Assembly: GCA_021613535.1 (NCBI GenBank)
Contig: CP075497.1
Location: 4,278,001-4,342,000 of the forward strand
Origin: Adineta vaga
Taxonomy: Eukaryota > Animalia > Rotifera
DNA: 64,000 nucleotides
Direction of reading: 5' to 3'
Shown: positions 1,945 through 27,900 of the stretch, piece after piece
Position numbering within the stretch: the stretch's first letter is position 1
Layout of the letters: every line of letters begins with the position of its first letter
Translations under genes and position numbers: made by a program
Notes under the pieces: generated by a model
Database searches by the model: none
What the model was told of the DNA's origin: nothing
What the model saw: only the letters and a program-made list of their open reading frames with translations

Positions 1945-4900
1945 TTATTTAAGAAATAGTTCTGTGTATTTTGCAATCAGTATTTCGGTAAATGTATTAA
2001 TAAGTGAATAATTTGCTAATGTATTCATTAGATCACCTTCACACCATGCAAGATTAGGTCCGAAGACGATCGATAGATTGGATGTTGTCATTAAATTCGT
2101 ATCTGAATAGTTAGCGACCTAAACAAAAGAGAAAGAAATTGAAGGAAATAATCATTTGCCGAAAGAAACATTTCCGGAAAAATTTAAGTTACTAAAAGGT
2201 ATTCATTTTTCTTTCTTATTCAATTATAATCAATGAGAATACAAAACGTTTAGACCAATCTTACCAGATTGAGAAATTCGATTAAATATTTTAGGACATT
2301 GTAATTCTCTGTTGGTAATTTTTCAATAAGAAGATCACGAATAACATCAACTTGATCAGGTCGTTTCAATGCTAAACAATAAAACAAAAGAAGTTTTCAT
2401 TAGACAACAAACATTCATCGATCAACAAAACAACAATACGAAGATACGTTAATCTTCTTATTGTTTTTGTTGTCTTTCCCGGAATAATAAATTCAAGCTA
2501 AATAAAAGAAGAGTGCAAAACATATTCAATAAGATAAGGTGTACCATATTAAAGTAAAAGAAGACTTGTTCAACTAATAGTTTTGTGCATAATAACGATG
2601 AGAGAGACACACACGACAAGAAAACTAGTACATACTCACTACCTGAGAGACCGAGAAGTTCAGGATATAAACGATAAGTCATTAAAGGTTCTGATAAATC
2701 TCGTAAAAACGTTTTTAAAACACAAGCAGCCAAATGAACATCTCCATACTGTTCAAATACAACCGGTTGACCTAAAAGTTCATCATTGAATAGATATCGA
2801 GAAAAACTAAGAGTTAGTTTTCTTTCAAACCTTCATTATATTTCTGTTGTACTTGTTTAATCAATTGAACAAGTGCAGCTCGTCGAAATATACCTGGCTC
2901 ATTCAGTCCTGTGTAAACATAGATAAGATATCATCATCATTCAAATAACTTCTTTTTATCTACCACTGTTTTTAATATATTCAATTGTTTGTCGAACAAC
3001 CAGTGGAATAGTTTCACCTGGTTCATTATTTAAGATACTAAACAAATTTTTTTGATAGAAATATCAACATTTTCAATGGTATCAATTTACTATTGAAGTG
3101 AAACATGAAATTTAGTTGTTGGTCGAATTTCATTTCGTGATATTTCTGCTGGAATTGCAGGATCAAAACTAAATATTTCGTTAAAATACTTTTATAGTAT
3201 TACAAAATATTTTTCTCGTTTTACTTTTTCACTTCGACAGGTATTCGAATGTTATCTAAATGTACATATTCTTCAAGTTGACTAAGACGATTAATATAAG
3301 TAACTTTTCGTGAAAATTTTGCACTTAAAAAAAACGAGATTTACAAGAGGTTACAAGAAAAAGATCATTTCCAACCTGATTATAGAACGAAGAAATGGCC
3401 AAAGAAATTTAATCCATTTCGTTGGATGTACAATATAAAATGCTTTTAAATTCTTTTTATATCTTATTTTAAAAACAAAAATGCAATTCGAAATTAGTTT
3501 TCAATAGATAATAATTGAAAGGTCTTACTTTCGATCGATTTTAACATAAGCTTTCATCAACCATCCATACGATGGTCGATTATACGAACGTAAACCATGA
3601 TGAAAATAAATAATAACATAATCCATATCCACATATTGATCAAATGTTCTCAAAACATATCTATCATTGAAGAAGAATTTAACTTTTCTTGTAAGTGAAT
3701 TTTCGAAATTACTTTAATAAACAATCATAAAACTTTTGAATTGTTTGAAATTTACTGTTTTTAATCACATCTTCATGCGGTAAACGACATGCAGAACAAA
3801 CAATTGTTTTACGACCAAATTTATCGTCACCACAACATTCTACTATTCCATATTCAGCTATTTTAGCCATTAATTGATAATCCTCATCTTCTGTATCTTG
3901 TAAATCCTTGACAAAACACACCAAACAATACATTCACATGCAATAAAAACTTCTTTAAACTTACTGTTGGTTCATGTCCACCTAATTCAGATTCAAAATC
4001 ATCATCAATAATTCCATCAGATGTTATATTGCCTTTGATTGCACCTCGATTTATCTTTGAATTCGATGCAATTTCGTTTTCGTATGCATCTAAATTCAAA
4101 AAAGAGTTAATTATATATGCACAGACACATACAAAGATTAGTAAAGCAATGAAAAACGAAAGCATTATTTACCACCGCTATTATCCTCATCGCCACTAAA
4201 ACCCAAATCATGTTGATGATCATCATAACCAAGATGTTGCCGTAAATCGGCAGCGTCTAGGAGAAGAATCGTGCAAAAAATATTAGAAGCATTAAAAAAA
4301 AAAATATTAAAACATTTGTTAATGATTATTAATATGATAACCCATAAAGAAAAAAAGCATTAGATATTAGTGAATCTAATTTGAAAGATATGATGATAGA
4401 TTCTTACCATATTCTAATTCATAATCATCAACTTCTGGAGGAAAAAATTCAGGATTTTGTCATGAAAAATTTATTTATTTACCTCGATCAGCAATTAAAT
4501 CAATATGATGTTCATCATATTCAAGTTGTGGAGGATCTTCTATATTTGTTCGTCCTGAAGGGACATTATTCCAATATGGATGTTTGTCTAAATTAAAAAA
4601 AACATAAATTATTATACCGAAATTCTCGTTCCTCTCTCTCTTTCTCATAAAAAAGCCTTGCAGCAATCACAATTGTTACGTTATTTCTTTGAAAATTAAT
4701 TCAATCGATCTAATGTCATATGAAATTTTCTTAATGAGATTTCCAACTGACAATAAAACAAAATAAAGCAGCACTTAAAATGAATCAATCGATGTCCACT
4801 GCATGCATGCATGATTACTCAAGTTGATACAATCATCCAATGAACATAGAATGTTTCTCTTCTCTTCTAGTAAATAAAACGGAAGTCTTAATAATCTATC

Positions 4901-21443: not shown

Positions 21444-21981
21444 ACAAAATCTCGTTAAAAACTATCATCATTTCTTTCTTTCTGCTCTTTTCTTCATGTC
21501 TGTAATATTAAAGTTAACCTTGATATCAATGTCTATATTAAAATAAAAGACTAAATGAATGAATTGATCTATTATGTGTTATTCAAGGTTTATGTTTTCA
21601 CTCATTTTTTCATTATATCAAAAGAAAAATCGAACTTTTTTTTAAACATAACGCACACACTCACACACACACACATAAATAAATATTTTCATAGCAGTAG
21701 TAACATCTCAGAAAGAATTTCTTTGTGTTTTATACAACCTGAATGAGAAAGAAGAAAATGGGCACACACATAAAAACTGTTATTGAAATAAAAAAAAGAG
21801 AAAAAAAAGGAAGAGATCAAGTATTATAGGTAGATGTACAGGAAAAGAAAAATGAACGTCTACTACTGTTATTTTTTTTGTATACAAAAAAAAAACGTCA
21901 CACAGTATCACAGATGAAACTGGGACAATGTTAAAAGAGAGAAGGAAAAGTGAAAGCAGAAAAGAAAGATGGTTATTATTG

Positions 21982-24900
21982 TTATTCATGCACCTTTAAT
22001 GGTATAAAATTATTATTATCATCTAATAATCGACTCTTACGAAGATTATTTGTTGTTGCTGTTGTTGATGGTGGTGATGGTGAATCATAGGATGTTAATA
22101 ATGATCGAGGATGATTATGGTTAGTAGTATTAGAAGCAGTATTAATACTCTCATCAAGATTAGAAGTTGAATTAGTTGTTGAATTATGTCCTAGTCGTGC
22201 TGTATTTATGGACGAAGTATTCGTATTAGTTGCATAAGAATCTTTATGTGGACTTCTTTGGCGAACGGGTGGTGGAGCAAATTTAATAGCTGATGTTGTG
22301 AATACAGACGGAGCAGCAGATGTTGTTGAATTAACAAGACTTGGAACAACGTTTAAATCTGTTGTTGATACGGGTGCAGCTGGTGGTGTATACTTATAAA
22401 TAGGTTTACGTTTTAGATCACGTAATGTTGTATCGAAATCGTATGAAACAAGATAACGTGAAGGAGTTACTGGTGATGTTGTTCTTTTTGTTGTTTCAGG
22501 TGATTTCACTAATGTATATCGTTGAGTTGCTTGTGGAGAACTATATCGATCATTATTACCGTATGTTGATGTTGGTTTTGATGTTGTTGTGGCTGTGGCT
22601 GTAGGAGATACAGTTCGTCGTGAACGACGAGGATACGCTTGAGATGATACTGTCGGTGGTGGTGGTGGCATCGATGTTGATGGCTTTTCACTTGTTGAGG
22701 CAAAATGATAATCGATAGGACTATTTGAATGATTGTCATCCAAGGACAAACTTAATGGTCGTCGATATGGAGACTGTGTCGATGTTGATGAAGAATTAGG
22801 TTTCGCATTATTTGATGAATAATAACGTGTAGATTCAGGTATCGCTGAAGCTCGATTTCGTCGTTGTTGATCTTTAGTAACGGATGAATGATTATTATTA
22901 CTCTGATTATTACGTAATTTTGCAGTATCAAAAAAGGAACTTGTATGTAATTCAAGTTCAACAAGAGAATTCGTTGGTGACATTGATCGATCATGTTTTT
23001 TTGTTGGTGTCGGTGACCGAAGATGAACTTTTTCATAATCATTCGATGTGGATTGATAATGATCGGAAGGAATGGGTACAGTGGATGATGGTATAGGTTT
23101 TGTTATTGAACTAAGTCGAATAGCAAGTATAGGTCCATGAGCTAACCAATCATGACGAAGAATATCTTTCGTTGTAGCACGATTACTAGCATTTGGTGTT
23201 AGACAATACCGTATAAGTGAAAGAGCACCTAGAAGAAAATTAACAAATAGAAAAAGAAGTTTAATTATAAATGAAATAATATCATTGAATCTTTTAGTTC
23301 CATCACCGAATATCTACTTATATGCACATGCTTGAGCGTGAGAATGAGATTAGTCTTAGGTCTTGAAAAAGAAAGTTTGATAGATAGAAGAAAACAAAAA
23401 TAAATGAAAACAAACAGAGAAAGAAATCAAGAAAATTCTTTTTTTTAGTAAGCCATTGTACGGGGATGATGATGATGATGATGATGATTTTTCGTTGTCA
23501 TGGCATTCGTTTTATGTTTATCTGTTGATGTTCGTCGACTGGAATGTTTTGTTCTTAATATTGGTTCTGTTTTATTATTATTATTTGTTATTGTATGTTC
23601 ATTGGAACGATTAGAATAAATCATTTGAGAATATCCATTTGTCGTCGCTTTAGATGTCAAATCCATATCTGCTAAACGTCCATTTTGTATTATAGACGGC
23701 AATGCAATGACCGAAGGACGAGAAGAAGTAGAAGTAGGTGGAGGAATCGTCGAAGGATGGAAATATGAAGGAGCTAGTGTTGATACAGGTTTGGATTCGA
23801 TTTCTAGTAATTGTTCTGTTGGTTTTGTATTTCGATTATGTGTCCATGCTGATGAATGTTCTACTTTGAGATTTTCATTTGGTTGTGCTGTTGAATTACG
23901 ATGATGATAAACAGGTGGATATTTGTAACCCAAATTAACCCACCAATGTACAGCAATATCGTCAACAGTCAAACGTTTCGATGGTAATACCGTCAAACAG
24001 CTACGTATCAATCCGAGAGCGCCTAGAGATTTTTTCGAGTGTGTTTTTAGAGAAAAAAAGAAAGGAATTGTATCTGAGGAAAAAGATCATCTTGGAAATT
24101 TAATTATATACATTTTATACTATCGATAATACTATTCTTTTCTATTTCTTAGAATAATTTCGATTACCTGATTGTTCACGAGGTTGAATAAAATCTCCTG
24201 CTGTTATATTTCGTACTAGCCGATTATAATCACCACCTTGAAATGGCATTGATCCATAGACAAGCGTATAGAGTAACACGCCCAATGACCAACAATCAAC
24301 CTATGTAGAGAAAAAAACATTTATATATTCATTGATTGTATTGATAAGAAAAATGCCATAAAAACTGATTAAATACGTACTTCAGGCCCGTAATAAGGAA
24401 TACCGGAGACGATTTCAGGTGATGCATACAATGGAGAACCACAGAAAGTATGTCTAAAGAAAAAATGGAATGTCATATGCATCTAAATATTTAAATAAAA
24501 AATGCTTTACAATAATCGTCGTGGTGACCAACTGTTACTCAAACCGAAATCTGCTAACTAGAAAAAAAATGATACTCATTTGATTAAATAATAACGAAGA
24601 AAATAATATTCGATTTACTTTAATATCACCCTTATGATCAATTAAAATATTTTCTAATTTGAGATCTCTATGAACAATTTGATTCTAAAAAATGAATGAT
24701 TTTTATTTTATATTTAAAAACGAACTTATTCTTTCGAGATATTGATATTACTTTATGAAGAAAATGAACAGCAGAAACAATTTGTCGAAATATTGCTCGT
24801 GCTTGAGATTCTGGTATACGTCTCATACGATTTAAATAATCATACAATTCACCACCACTCGCATATTCCATTACAAGAATTATTTTCTCTCGACTTTCAT

Positions 24901-27900
24901 AGACTAAAATAGAATTACATGAAACAAAATAATTCATTTTTGATTAAACAAAAAAACGATTATCTTTTACCTTCTTTAACTTTGATAATATATGGATGAT
25001 TAAGACTAGTCATAAAATCGATTTCTCGTCGAATTCTTGCCAAATCATGTGGATTTTCAATACGCGATTTTTTAATTGTTTTTATTGCTACTTGTTCATT
25101 CTTACGTTTATCCAATGCCAATTTAACTTTTCCATATGTACCTTTGCCTAATGTTTGTTTGAAATCGAAACGACTATGTAATGTTTCACGTTGTGGACCA
25201 TTACCATTGGGATGACTTCCATTACTACCTGTATGTTCTTGTGAGGAAGGAGGAGTTGTAGTCGAATCACCGAAACTATTTAAACTTCCTAAACTAGACC
25301 AATTCTGAGTACGTGTTCGAGGACGATTACTGCCATTTGTTCCTCCACCTTCTAGCCTATACAAAGAGAAAAAGAAAAGATTATTATTTTTAGTTTAATA
25401 ATCAAAACGTAAGATCAAAAGGAGATTTAAACTCTTAGACTATCTTCAAAGATAATTGTAAAAACCTTCTACTGTCAATATAGTTCATATGTCTATTTTC
25501 TCGACATTTGATTTTATGATAGAATCAAATTTTTTTAATGAATACCCATGAATTTCTATTCTTAAGGTCTTTAACTGCATACAAATAGTTTTCATCAAAG
25601 ACGTTCTCTTTACCTGCTGGAACCCATTATAAATTTATAAAGATCAGATAAACCGCTTGAATTCTTATCCGAATTTTGGAGCGCAATCATTGATAAAGTT
25701 TTCGTTGACTTATTTTTATATAGAAGAAGTTTATATAGTCACAAGTGTCAAGTAAACTATAATTATGTGTTAGATATAAGTACTGTTGTTGTTGTTGATG
25801 ATGAAAGCAACGAAAAGAATAAGATTAAAGAGATTGAAAAGCTATTCAATGTCAATGTGTTCTTATACAGTTTTTGTTTCTCTCATTATCGTCAATGCGT
25901 ATATAGTTGATATGCAGCATATTTGGTGTAAAGATAAGTATGAATAAATTGTACTGTATATGAGAAGAATAACAATGAGAAAGAAGAGAAGAAATGAAAT
26001 GTTCAGATGATGATTTGGTATTTTTTACAACAGAAAATCGTGTTTTATCGTCGCCGTCGTCTTCTTCTTCTTGTTCGCTTTTTTCTTTCTTTCTTTCTTT
26101 CTTTCTTTCTCTCTCTTCTCTTTACAAACTTCACTTTTTATGTATGTATTCTTTTCAACAAAGACGAAAGCGTACGAACATACGAAACGATACTTGACGA
26201 AATAGCATACTGACGACGTGACGACGCCTGCTCGGTTTTCTCTCTCTCCCTCTCTCTCTCATTTTGCTTTAAAACGAAACCGCAAGCCAAATGTGAAGGA
26301 GAAAAAGAGAGAGAAGAATTTTGTTCTCTTATTTTATGACCACATAGAAATCATAACCTCTCATGTGTAACTAATATTAATGTCTATGATCGTTGCTATC
26401 TTGAAATTATTTTTTTTAATTATTTAACTATACGCTAATCCTTCGATCGAGTGAATCACTTTGATATTTTCTTTCGATATATAATTGAAATAAGAGAGAA
26501 GAACACATATGAAAAGTTTTAATAACAGTTTTTGTTCGTTTGATTTCTGTATGATATTTTACGCTTATTATATCGAGGTTTTTCTCGAGGACAAAATAAT
26601 GACTAGAAGAGCGGACGACATCAAGGTGAGTTTTCAAAATAAAGAAAAAATCTGCACTAGTTAAACAAAAGATATATAATAACATTTTTCTGTTTTTTTA
26701 GCTCGCAGGGAAGAAAGGTGGAGTAAAACCTATTTCTCCTTTTAATGCCAATATAAAAGAAGAAAAGAAAAATATTTGTATTTATCGAAAAATACTCTTT
26801 ACATCTTACTTGACTAATAAATCATCATGAGAATGTGAACGTTGTTGCTCAAAATAATTTAATTTAATAGCTATAGTTCCACCATGAGATTTAATTTCAT
26901 GCGCTCTTCGTCCAGTTGCCATATAGAGAAATTCTTCAAATACGTAATAATATTGAATAGTAAACTGACATATTTGTATGAAAAAATATCTACACGTACA
27001 GGTTGTTATCTACCTATCAATCGACCTATCTATCTATCAGAATAAAAATAAATCGAATGACAGATGATCATTACGGTGGAAGAGAGAAAAAAAGTCTGTT
27101 AGTTTTGTTTTTTTGTATATATAAACAAGGAGAATGAAATAATGTCAATGAAATGTTTTAATATATAAGAATAATGGCAAGTAATCGAAAAAAAAATGAA
27201 CATGAATGTCGGAGACGTCATTTCATTTTTTTTCTCTTCGATTGTGGTATCAATGATATGTTAAAATCAATATATATATATATATACGTACGAGAATAAA
27301 TTGTGACAAGACTCTGTATTTGACATATTCATTATGTAGAAAGATACTAGTTGTAATTAACTCGAAAAAAACGAAAAAAAAGAATGAATAATGATGAGGA
27401 TTGATCGTTCTAGGTGAAAAGCTTATAGCATTGAAGTTTGTTTATAACACTTGCGTAAGACGGATGTAATCGAGATGACAACGAAAGATTTCATTATTAC
27501 TTCTTTGTTGAGAAAAGAAAGAAAGAGAGAGAGAGAGAGCGAGAGAGACAGAGAACTGTTTGTTGAGTTTACTTTCTTTATATACATATACAAATGTGTA
27601 TTCGTTCAAAAAGATCAAATGTAGGTGGATTTGATTAGATTTCACTTTTCTTTAACGATTATGATGTCGTATCTCGTTACTTATTGTCTTAGATCATATA
27701 TGCATATTATGTTCATACCTCATTGTAGTCATGAATAATGAAGTTCAATGATTTCTTGACTGAAAGTTGTTGACTGTTGTTATGTTGTAATAAGCTGAAT
27801 ATATGGTCTATAGTTTGCTACTGACAGTGACCTTATCAGCCTTATAGAAAAGTACGAACAAGAGACAACGATAGACAGAATAGAAAAAGGACTAGACCTA

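What the first reader, a model, noticed from the sequence alone, without database searches (positions are those of the whole stretch)
21982..24022. NUAK kinase with two alternative terminal exons, each encoding its own kinase subdomain XI and tail
The last shared exon ends QPREQS-G at a phase-1 donor near 24168, before the kinase fold is complete. Two AG-preceded exons follow, both in the right phase. Exon A (24022-23445) reads [33 protein letters not shown] and ends in a His-run tail with its own stop. Exon B (23228-21982) reads [32 protein letters not shown] and continues openly into the ~330-aa S/T/P-rich ORF. Both keep the invariant subdomain-XI Arg and the HxW motif. Exon A matches the canonical NUAK HWWVNxGY, and exon B keeps the RAT motif. 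Inference: an exon duplication lets splicing or polyadenylation choice swap the end of the catalytic C-lobe together with the whole regulatory tail.
Basis: partly seen in the sequence, partly recalled or inferred. Interest (0 to 1): 0.8.

Follow-up and report, generated by a model that had tools for sequence, protein, structure and literature searches.

The report
Rotifer NUAK kinase: duplicated last exon
In the bdelloid rotifer Adineta vaga the NUAK kinase gene has two tandem versions of its last coding exon, each able to finish the catalytic domain and add a different tail. This is a lineage-specific example of a known kind of splicing switch, but use of the second exon in RNA is still inferred, not seen.

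Summary
On the minus strand, exon 7 ends in phase 1 at 24168. Two AG-preceded exons follow in the same phase: A (24022-23445, own stop) and B (23228-21982). Each encodes kinase subdomain XI plus a tail.

The organism is Adineta vaga and the gene is its NUAK orthologue. Exon A is ancestral: Seison, acanthocephalans and Brachionus have only this type. Exon B is found only in bdelloids. Both exons sit in the same order in the chr3 homoeolog, A. ricciae, Rotaria, Didymodactylos and an environmental scaffold. Their kinase parts are mostly under purifying selection. Either exon completes the Pfam kinase profile, and XI-B folds with pLDDT about 93.

E7>A is seen directly in eight intron-free RNA-derived contigs from at least three other bdelloids. 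Four of them run on through the spacer and exon B, so exon B then lies in the 3'UTR, and alternative polyadenylation gets little support. E7>B appears only in the two NCBI A. vaga gene models and is otherwise inferred from conservation.

Verdict: a real tandem-duplicated terminal exon, most likely chosen by alternative acceptor use. It is a new member of a known class.

The parts
24168..24300 (-). Exon 7, the last shared exon (VDCWSLG...QPREQS + first base of a Gly codon). It ends in phase 1; the donor GT is at 24167-24166.
   Evidence: Pkinase profile positions 178-210. 95-100% identical in protein to the C3 copy and A. ricciae.
24023..24167 (-). Intron 7 (145 nt), between exon 7 and the proximal acceptor of exon A.
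   Evidence: It is removed in RNA-derived contigs of other bdelloids. Its length is 98-227 nt in other loci.
23445..24022 (-). Exon A: the ancestral terminal coding exon. It encodes subdomain XI of NUAK type ([12 protein letters not shown]), a 158-aa weakly constrained tail ending in a His7 run and ..PRTMAY, and its own stop (23445-23447).
   Evidence: The only type in the outgroups. XI-A dN/dS is 0.11-0.26 within Adineta and Didymodactylos; tail dN/dS is 0.36-1.1. Stop position and the C-terminal P[RH]T..Y motif are conserved.
23922..24022 (-). The part of exon A that encodes kinase subdomain XI (helices H-I of the C-lobe).
   Evidence: The Pkinase profile is completed to position 263/263 in A-type proteins. 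Alignment to outgroup NUAKs.
23229..23444 (-). Spacer between exon A's stop and exon B's acceptor (216 nt). It is retained in A-type transcripts of other bdelloids, where it is 3'UTR.
23297..23362 (-). Conserved non-coding block of about 65-70 nt in the spacer: CTAAGACTAAT ... GCTCAAGCATG ... GGTGATGGA. GGTGAYGG is invariant in 7 of 7 sequences and GCATG is present in all 7. It is a candidate regulator of the A/B acceptor choice; its function has not been tested.
   Evidence: No conserved RNA structure, no Rfam match, no significant pairing with intron 7.
21982..23228 (-). Exon B: a terminal coding exon found only in bdelloids. It encodes a second subdomain XI ([28 protein letters not shown]) and a 381-aa S/T/P/N-rich tail predicted to be disordered, with about ten conserved short motifs. 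Stop at 21982-21984.
   Evidence: XI-B dN/dS is 0.09-0.31 in six comparisons, 0.63 in one low-dS pair, and one pair is dS-saturated; tail dN/dS is 0.18-0.64. 41 invariant columns in 22 bdelloid sequences. The tail has pLDDT below 50.
23128..23228 (-). The part of exon B that encodes the alternative kinase subdomain XI.
   Evidence: Pkinase profile 2-263/263 in the B-type protein P0082, 251.4 bits against 250.6 for the A type. AlphaFold2 pLDDT is about 93-94 for residues 321-350, with helices at 326-332 and 343-353. It aligns through to the end of the MARK4 kinase domain.
21620..21981 (-). Distal 3'UTR after exon B, with several blocks conserved in the C3 homoeolog, A. ricciae and the full-length RNA contig L013.
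24381..25356 (-). Exons 2-6 of the kinase (25356-24971, 24903-24752, 24684-24619, 24557-24511, 24453-24381), separated by 57-80 nt introns.
25614..25690 (-). Near candidate first coding exon (MIALQNSD...). Its homologue is the first exon of the C3 gene model.
26809..26922 (-). Distal first coding exon (MATGRR...DDLLVK), used by the NCBI model of this gene.
   Evidence: The homologous exon is used in RNA contig L022.

Best explanation
This is the NUAK (AMPK-related kinase) gene of Adineta vaga, on the minus strand. Its ancestral last coding exon (A) was duplicated in tandem before the living bdelloids diverged, producing exon B about 0.8 kb downstream. Both copies keep the same phase-1 acceptor position and both encode the last two helices of the kinase C-lobe (subdomain XI). 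After that point they diverge into unrelated tails. The single exon 7 donor at 24168 can pair with either acceptor. With the proximal acceptor (24022), the protein ends with the NUAK-type XI and a short, weakly constrained tail; translation stops at 23445, and the spacer plus exon B become 3'UTR. With the distal acceptor (23228), exon A and the spacer are removed as part of a 939-nt intron, and the protein ends with XI-B and a 381-aa disordered tail carrying about ten conserved short motifs. Both forms share one distal 3'UTR and poly(A) region. This is therefore alternative acceptor choice within a composite terminal exon, not a choice between poly(A) sites. Shown: the anatomy, the homology, the age, the selection, the ability of either exon to complete the fold, and the E7>A junction in RNA of other bdelloids. 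Inferred: use of the E7>B junction in RNA, regulation of the choice, and any functional difference between the two proteins.
For: Anatomy and phases. NUAK identity: the best non-rotifer hits are named NUAK1 or NUAK2. Exon A is ancestral and exon B occurs only in bdelloids. Both exons are in the same order in A. vaga C6 and C3, A. ricciae, Rotaria, Didymodactylos and an environmental scaffold, and only these two loci exist in the genome. Homology is confined to XI. Purifying selection: XI-A dN/dS 0.11-0.26 in Adineta and Didymodactylos; XI-B 0.09-0.31 in six of eight comparisons. The XI-B consensus is nearly invariant over 23 distinct sequences. Either exon completes Pkinase 2-263/263 at equal score. 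XI-B has pLDDT about 93. E7>A is seen in eight intron-free contigs (L007-L011, L013, L022). E7>B is used in both NCBI A. vaga models (P0082, P0046), which were made with a pipeline that uses transcripts (funannotate, PASA, EVM; PMC8494291). P0082 also contains a 1.45-kb first intron, which I would not expect from an ab initio predictor (inference). No Met upstream of XI-B is conserved, and stops separate A from B in transcripts, so XI-B can only reach protein through its acceptor. RNA-like A. vaga runs hold 0.51-0.65 of the sampled words of this stretch; a B-only mRNA predicts 0.53-0.55 and an A+spacer+B mRNA predicts 0.74. This last point is weak.
Against: No RNA-derived contig or protein with the E7>B junction was found: not in the word search across the junction, among 65 exon B hits, in the JGI junction-pattern scan or in the 1.84-billion representative search. 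L007, L008, L013 and L022 pass unbroken through both would-be branch points, so E7>B was rare or absent in those samples. The A. vaga models are predictions whose evidence I could not inspect. Other annotations of the same locus disagree: some give A only plus a separate B gene, others a tandem A>B join. The word-share argument cannot tell a B-only mRNA from incomplete coverage of a longer one.
Confidence: 0.65

Rival explanations
1. One form per lineage and no real switch. In A. vaga only E7>B is used and exon A is a slowly decaying relic, while in some other bdelloids only E7>A is used and exon B is on its way out or serves as UTR.
For: Both A. vaga gene models use B. The word share of RNA-like runs fits a B-only mRNA. 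All RNA contigs from other bdelloids are A-type. The A tail is weakly constrained, with dN/dS 0.36-1.1, and XI-A looks relaxed in the sampled Rotaria paralog at 0.75-1.0.
Against: XI-A has dN/dS 0.11-0.13 between A. vaga C6, C3 and A. ricciae. Its frame, acceptor, stop position and C-terminal motif are kept in both A. vaga homoeologs. XI-B and the B-tail motifs are equally well kept in the species whose transcripts are A-type: in L007 and L013 exon B is open and conserved. Neither pattern is expected for a relic.
Confidence: 0.15
2. Tandem read-through form. Exon A is an internal exon whose late donor splices to exon B's acceptor, giving one protein with XI-A, the A tail, XI-B and the B tail, as in several Rotaria, A. 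steineri and Didymodactylos gene models.
For: Ten annotated proteins of 813-1075 aa have this layout. In the window a phase-compatible C|GT lies three codons after the His run.
Against: The donor position differs between the models. The C|GT is absent in A. vaga C3, Rotaria, L007 and Didymodactylos. Four A-type transcripts retain the spacer unspliced. An orphan second XI behind about 150 disordered residues would have no reason to keep kinase-core residues at dN/dS around 0.1 (inference). Stop position and C-terminal motif of A are conserved.
Confidence: 0.08
3. Exon B is not part of the kinase protein. It is 3'UTR, or a separate downstream gene or transcript with its own start, as the A. ricciae and Rotaria annotations model it.
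For: Separate B-only gene models exist (P0001, P0020, P0022, P0037). Exon B lies in the 3'UTR of all A-type transcripts seen.
Against: A frame of 347-572 codons is open in every bdelloid locus; for 414 codons the chance is 2e-14. dN/dS is below 1 with 41 invariant columns. No start codon upstream of XI-B is conserved; the modelled starts are non-homologous codons in the spacer. The homology to XI begins exactly at a conserved AG|GT acceptor in the phase of exon 7.
Confidence: 0.05

Closest known systems
Tandem duplicated exon substitution events with C-terminal swaps (Martinez-Gomez, Tress and colleagues; PMC9741552, PMC8373072)
   Same: Two adjacent homologous exons in the same phase, used alternatively, both old and under selection. 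In that survey 77 of 236 human events swap one C-terminal region for another, and terminal swaps often involve disordered regions.
   Different: Here the homologous part is the last structural element of a kinase catalytic core, and the rest of each exon is an unrelated tail. The event occurs only in bdelloid rotifers. The proximal exon has its own stop, and the distal exon then lies in its 3'UTR. Exclusive use has not been shown by reads.
FYN exons 7A/7B (FynB/FynT)
   Same: A kinase in which tandem duplicated exons replace part of the catalytic domain and change regulation.
   Different: The FYN exons are internal and mutually exclusive. They cover the SH2-kinase linker and the N-terminal end of the kinase domain, not the C-lobe end plus tail.
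PKC beta I/II alternative C-terminal exons, and JNK or p38 alternative C-lobe exons (from my own knowledge; not checked here)
   Same: Alternative exons that change the C-terminal tail (PKC beta) or a C-lobe segment (JNK, p38) of a protein kinase.
   Different: None of them swaps subdomain XI together with a tail of several hundred residues. They belong to different kinase families and are vertebrate events.
NUAK1/NUAK2 (ARK5/SNARK), UNC-82 and Drosophila NUAK
   Same: The catalytic domain is orthologous: the best non-rotifer hits are 60-63% identical over residues 160-350 of P0046. The activation-loop motif is kept, and exon A has the HWWVN.GY signature.
   Different: No second XI exon exists in the outgroups examined (Seison, an acanthocephalan) or in the NUAK proteins retrieved. 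Neither bdelloid tail matches tails of non-bdelloid NUAKs.
Competing-RNA-structure control of alternative 3' regions (Drosophila PGRP-LC, cited in PMC9013439)
   Same: A choice between tandem alternative 3' exons from a single upstream donor.
   Different: I found no conserved pairing between intron 7 and the spacer and no conserved structure in the spacer block.

Membership tests
NUAK subfamily of AMPK-related protein kinases | Complete eukaryotic protein kinase domain | tested here: met
   Pfam Pkinase 2-263/263: 251.4 bits with exon B (P0082) and 250.6 bits with exon A (P0089). Exons 2, 3 and 7 of the window match individually.
NUAK subfamily of AMPK-related protein kinases | Closest named relatives are NUAK1 or NUAK2 rather than another AMPK-related kinase | tested here: met
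   In one search, after the rotifer and acanthocephalan proteins, the named hits listed are NUAK1 or NUAK2 (E about 1e-72 to 1e-70, 60-63% identity). The PDB has no NUAK entry; the nearest solved kinases are MARK4, MARK1-3, AMPK alpha and SIK3. No phylogenetic tree was built.
NUAK subfamily of AMPK-related protein kinases | Activation-loop Thr in the ..[12 protein letters not shown].. context (the LKB1 site; its role is from my own knowledge) | tested here: met
   Exon 6 reads [17 protein letters not shown] and aligns with the MARK4 activation segment. Phosphorylation was not tested.
NUAK subfamily of AMPK-related protein kinases | HWWVN.GY signature directly after helix I | tested here: met
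   Present in exon A and in all outgroup NUAKs. Not met by exon B, which reads RHDWLAHGP.
NUAK subfamily of AMPK-related protein kinases | GILK motifs in the tail (PP1-beta/MYPT1 binding in human NUAK1; from my own knowledge) | tested here: not met
   Neither tail translation contains GILK. One non-rotifer hit (P0104) has it. The motif may be a feature of vertebrate or other lineages rather than a defining one.
Tandem duplicated exon substitution (homologous alternative exons) | Two adjacent exons that are homologous to each other | tested here: met
   hhalign of the exon A and exon B profiles: probability 94%, E 9e-8 over 41 columns. 48% identity over 31 residues by tblastn.
Tandem duplicated exon substitution (homologous alternative exons) | Same reading phase and equivalent splice-site position, so that either exon fits the upstream exon | tested here: met
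   Both begin after AG with the last two bases of the same Gly codon, and exon 7 ends in phase 1. The AG|G boundary and the split Gly codon are kept at both acceptors in all six genomic loci.
Tandem duplicated exon substitution (homologous alternative exons) | Both exons conserved and under purifying selection | tested here: met
   Caveat: XI-A looks relaxed in one Rotaria paralog, and the A tail is only weakly constrained.
Tandem duplicated exon substitution (homologous alternative exons) | Transcripts carry one exon or the other as coding sequence | tested here: inconclusive
   E7>A is seen in eight RNA-derived contigs. E7>B is seen only in the NCBI A. vaga gene models.

The most novel reading that the evidence does not exclude
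Bdelloid rotifers evolved a regulated switch that changes NUAK in one step. The switch replaces the last two helices of the catalytic core and exchanges the ancestral short tail for a 380-residue disordered tail carrying about ten conserved docking or phosphorylation motifs. The choice is controlled by the conserved GCAUG/GGUGAYGG block in the spacer and combines with at least two or three alternative 5' exons. Together with the Raf case already noted in this genome (s1-484571), this would point to a wider bdelloid habit of diversifying signalling kinases through duplicated exons.
Probability: 0.3. Interest if true: 0.6.

Novelty: new member of a known kind. Interest (0 to 1): 0.45.

Why it matters
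Alternative exons that replace part of a kinase catalytic core are rare and, where they have been studied (FYN, for example), they change regulation. This swap couples the end of the C-lobe to the whole regulatory tail of NUAK, an LKB1-pathway kinase. The new exon has been kept throughout the sampled bdelloid families and in both homoeologs of a paleotetraploid genome. If both forms are made, that gives a natural experiment on how the C-lobe end and the tail work together in AMPK-related kinases. There is also a practical consequence for annotation. Public gene models of this locus disagree in three ways (A only plus a separate B 'gene', a tandem A+B join, or B only), so most of them are wrong or incomplete, and the B-only 'uncharacterized proteins' are probably gene-model artefacts.

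Tried and rejected
2. Search for E7>B in RNA-derived data, all negative outside the NCBI A. vaga models: word search across the junction, inspection of all 65 exon B hits, a degenerate junction-pattern scan of JGI contigs (one real hit, A-type, and one chance bacterial hit, L012), and the exhaustive representative search.
3. Retrocopy that would record a spliced junction in the A. vaga genome: none.
4. Looping-out of exon A by pairing between intron 7 and the spacer: duplex z-scores from -2.4 to +1.2, diffuse A/U pairings that differ in each species. Rejected.
5. Conserved RNA structure in the spacer block: consensus -2.1 kcal/mol, only a trivial 5-bp hairpin. Rfam: nothing near threshold.
6. 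snoRNA or miRNA reading of the spacer block: the box order does not fit and no hairpin forms. Rejected by inspection.
7. Proximal poly(A) site after exon A: no conserved hexamer. Contigs L009-L011 end inside the spacer block but run into adapter without an A run. Unresolved, and not supported.
8. Conserved donor for an A>B join: absent in four of eight sequences.
9. Independent translation of exon B: no conserved start codon.
10. Homology of the two tails to each other, or to non-bdelloid NUAK tails: none found.
11. Pfam on each terminal exon alone: no hit, because the XI fragment is too short on its own.
12. Source of the RNA runs: no paper holds the accession prefix. Brachionus genomic context: the protein was not on record.
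Full report
WHAT IS THERE. The window is G000:C6:4278001-4342000 of a 100.8-Mb, six-contig genome. Protein hits identify it as the Adineta vaga AV20 assembly. A protein kinase gene lies on the minus strand between about 26922 and 21600. I fixed its exons from the sequence: near first exon 25690-25614, then 25356-24971, 24903-24752, 24684-24619, 24557-24511, 24453-24381 and 24300-24168. All are bounded by GT..AG, with introns of 57-80 nt between exons 2-7. By nucleotide count, exon 7 ends in phase 1. Two further exons follow. Exon A (24022-23445) and exon B (23228-21982) each come after AG, and each starts with the last two bases of the same Gly codon. Exon A reads [32 protein letters not shown].. 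and stops after 191 codons. Exon B reads [31 protein letters not shown].. and stops after 414 codons. Frames this long are expected by chance at 4e-7 and 2e-14.

HOW I HANDLED THE SPLICED MODEL. Each exon was searched by reference on its own. Where a full-length protein was needed I used stored database proteins exactly as the search tool returned them: P0082 (the NCBI model of this gene), P0046 (the NCBI model of the chr3 copy) and P0089 (A. ricciae). Scripts masked them or worked on 23229-23381 and 23419-23444.

FAMILY. Exons 2, 3 and 7 match Pfam Pkinase. A word search across residues 160-350 of P0046 returns rotifer and acanthocephalan proteins first, and then proteins named NUAK1 or NUAK2 at 60-63% identity. 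The PDB holds no NUAK structure. MARK4, MARK1-3, AMPK alpha and SIK3 are the nearest solved kinases, and the alignment runs through XI-B to its end. The gene is the A. vaga NUAK orthologue.

ORIGIN AND AGE OF THE TWO EXONS. The A. vaga genome has exactly two loci carrying these exons, this one on C6 and one on C3. Chromosomes 3 and 6 are homoeologous in this paleotetraploid (PMC8494291). The C3 copy keeps every exon, including its own exon A (148 codons) and exon B (347 codons), with the same order, acceptors and stops. The same E7-A-B order is found in A. ricciae, Rotaria sp. Silwood2, Didymodactylos carnosus and an environmental bdelloid scaffold. Seison nebaliae and the acanthocephalan Neoechinorhynchus agilis have a single terminal exon of the A type, and nothing like exon B within 10 kb downstream. 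Proteins of Brachionus, Pomphorhynchus and other animals also carry only the A-type HWWVN.GY.YPP end. Exon A is therefore ancestral. Among the taxa sampled, exon B is confined to bdelloids, and it predates their diversification and the homoeolog split. Profile-profile comparison shows that A and B are homologous over the first ~41 columns only (probability 94%, E 9e-8). The tails are unrelated or have diverged beyond recognition. Neither tail matches non-bdelloid NUAKs or any Pfam family.

SELECTION AND FOLDABILITY. Between the two A. vaga homoeologs, dN/dS is 0.13 for XI-A, 0.31 for XI-B, 0.66 for the A tail and 0.48 for the B tail, at dS 0.5-1.2. Against A. ricciae the values are 0.11, 0.12, 0.36 and 0.18. 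Across wider comparisons XI-B mostly stays at 0.09-0.30. The exceptions are 0.63 in one pair with dS of only 0.09, and one dS-saturated pair. XI-A is conserved in Adineta and Didymodactylos but looks relaxed (0.75-1.0) in the sampled Rotaria paralog. These are Nei-Gojobori estimates on 33 codons and are noisy. XI-B has a near-invariant consensus (GALSLI.yCL.Pdan.[13 protein letters not shown].hGPvLs) over 23 distinct sequences. The B exon alignment has 41 invariant columns grouped into about ten short islands. Either exon completes the Pkinase profile to its last position at the same score, 251.4 against 250.6 bits. An AlphaFold2 model of P0082 gives pLDDT 93-94 for residues 321-350, with helices at 326-332 and 343-353, and below 50 for the whole B tail. 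XI-B thus behaves as a working end of a kinase C-lobe attached to a long disordered tail.

RNA EVIDENCE. The E7>A junction is directly visible in eight contigs that lack all kinase introns and so derive from spliced RNA. Four are from one Logan study (L007-L010), one is from another (L011), and two are from sister JGI samples (L013, L022). They represent at least three organisms other than A. vaga. In L007, L008, L013 and L022 the contig continues past exon A's stop, through the unspliced spacer, into or through exon B. In L013 and L022 it reaches a 3'UTR that shares conserved blocks with the A. vaga sequence downstream of exon B. In the A form, therefore, exon B is 3'UTR, and both forms would share one distal 3' end. 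L009-L011 stop inside the spacer, but they run into adapter without an A run, so they do not show a poly(A) site. No conserved poly(A) hexamer follows exon A.

The E7>B junction is present in the two NCBI A. vaga models (P0082..QPREQS|[10 protein letters not shown]..; P0046..QPREQS|GAFSLIQYCL..). That annotation combined PASA transcript alignments with ab initio predictions. P0082 also carries a 1.45-kb first intron, which I take as a sign of transcript support; that is an inference. I found the junction nowhere else: not among full-length relatives, not among 65 exon B hits, all of which start in the spacer or intron, not in the JGI junction scan, and not among representatives of 1.84 billion proteins. 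These negatives have limits. As a weak quantitative hint, the RNA-like A. vaga runs hold 0.51-0.65 of the sampled words of 21800-25720. A B-only mRNA predicts 0.53-0.55, an A+spacer+B mRNA predicts 0.74, and an A-only mRNA with a proximal end predicts 0.35.

WHY E7>B IS STILL THE BEST READING. Exon B must be translated: its frame is open for 347-572 codons in every bdelloid locus, dN/dS is below 1, and it has invariant motifs. It has no conserved start codon upstream of XI-B. In the A-type transcripts it is separated from the A frame by stops, and in L013 it is also out of frame. It can only reach protein through its acceptor. That acceptor sits exactly where the homology to XI begins, in the phase of exon 7. 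The alternative feeder is a donor late in exon A, as used in ten long gene models. But its position differs between models, and the C|GT site is missing in A. vaga C3, Rotaria, L007 and Didymodactylos. A second XI behind a disordered linker would also have no reason to keep kinase-core residues.

REGULATION (speculative). The spacer holds a 65-70-nt block at window ~23362-23297 that is better conserved than the A tail. GGTGAYGG is invariant in all seven sequences and GCATG is present in all seven. GCAUG is the core of the Rbfox binding site; that comes from my own knowledge and was not tested. The block has no conserved secondary structure, matches no Rfam family and shows no significant pairing with intron 7. 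It is a candidate protein-binding regulator of acceptor choice and nothing more at this stage.

COMPARISON AND NOVELTY. Swaps of homologous, tandemly duplicated 3' exons are a recognised class: 77 of 236 human events replace one C-terminal region with another (PMC9741552), and kinases are among the genes with duplicated-exon substitutions (FYN). The bdelloid NUAK case fits that class. Its particular points are that the homologous part is the last element of the catalytic core, that it is coupled to unrelated tails, that the downstream exon doubles as 3'UTR of the upstream form, and that it occurs only in bdelloids and is kept in both homoeologs. I rate it a new member of a known kind. I found no paper describing it. 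A follow-up report describes mutually exclusive exons in bdelloid Raf (s1-484571), which I did not test.

VERDICT. E7>B rests on A. vaga gene models and on conservation logic, and the poly(A)-choice part is not supported. Confidence that both acceptors are used from exon 7 is about 0.65.

Noticed in passing
window 26922-26809 and 25690-25614 (minus strand); L007, L013, L022: The same NUAK gene has alternative 5' coding exons. A distal exon (MATGRR..DDLLVK) is used by the NCBI model P0082 and by RNA contig L022. A near exon (MIALQNSD..) has its homologue as the first exon of the C3 model; both are conserved in four other bdelloid loci. A third, long N-terminal form (MLFPSNR../MVFPSS..) appears in RNA contigs L007, L011 and L013. 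L013 and L022 are 99.7% identical downstream but differ in their 5' exon.
   Followed up: partly
window ~23362-23297 (minus strand); L006 ~4630-4710: A conserved non-coding block in the spacer between exon A's stop and exon B: GGTGAYGG is invariant and GCATG is present in all seven bdelloid sequences. It is better conserved than the exon A tail. It has no conserved RNA structure and no Rfam match.
   Followed up: partly
window ~21981-21620 (minus strand): The 3'UTR after exon B has several blocks nearly identical in A. vaga C6, C3, A. ricciae and RNA contig L013 (for example GTCCCAGTTTCATCTGTGATACTG and AACAGTAGTAGAC). This suggests post-transcriptional control elements.
   Followed up: no
L009, L010, L011 (3' ends): Three RNA-derived contigs from two studies end within about 12 nt of each other inside the conserved spacer block and run straight into Illumina adapter without an A run. 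This could be a discrete RNA end or a drop in coverage. Unexplained.
   Followed up: no
public gene models P0001, P0020, P0022, P0037, P0043, and P0076-P0086: Annotations of this locus in other bdelloids disagree. Exon B is modelled as a separate 'uncharacterized protein' with a start codon in the spacer or intron, or exons A and B are chained in tandem through non-homologous donors. These are probably gene-model artefacts.
   Followed up: partly
window 23490-23470 (minus strand): The His7 run near the end of the exon A tail is specific to the C6 copy. It is absent from the C3 homoeolog and from A. ricciae.
   Followed up: yes
L014, L016, L021: Synteny around NUAK is kept across bdelloid genera: a TAF2-like gene lies downstream on the opposite strand in all three loci, and a cofilin/ADF gene lies upstream in L016 and L021.
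   Followed up: no
L016 (Rotaria sp. Silwood2): In this Rotaria paralog XI-A reads ..RFNIDNITTHEWINIGY.. and shows dN/dS of about 0.75-1.0 against other bdelloids, while XI-B stays conserved. Exon A may be losing constraint in that copy.
   Followed up: partly
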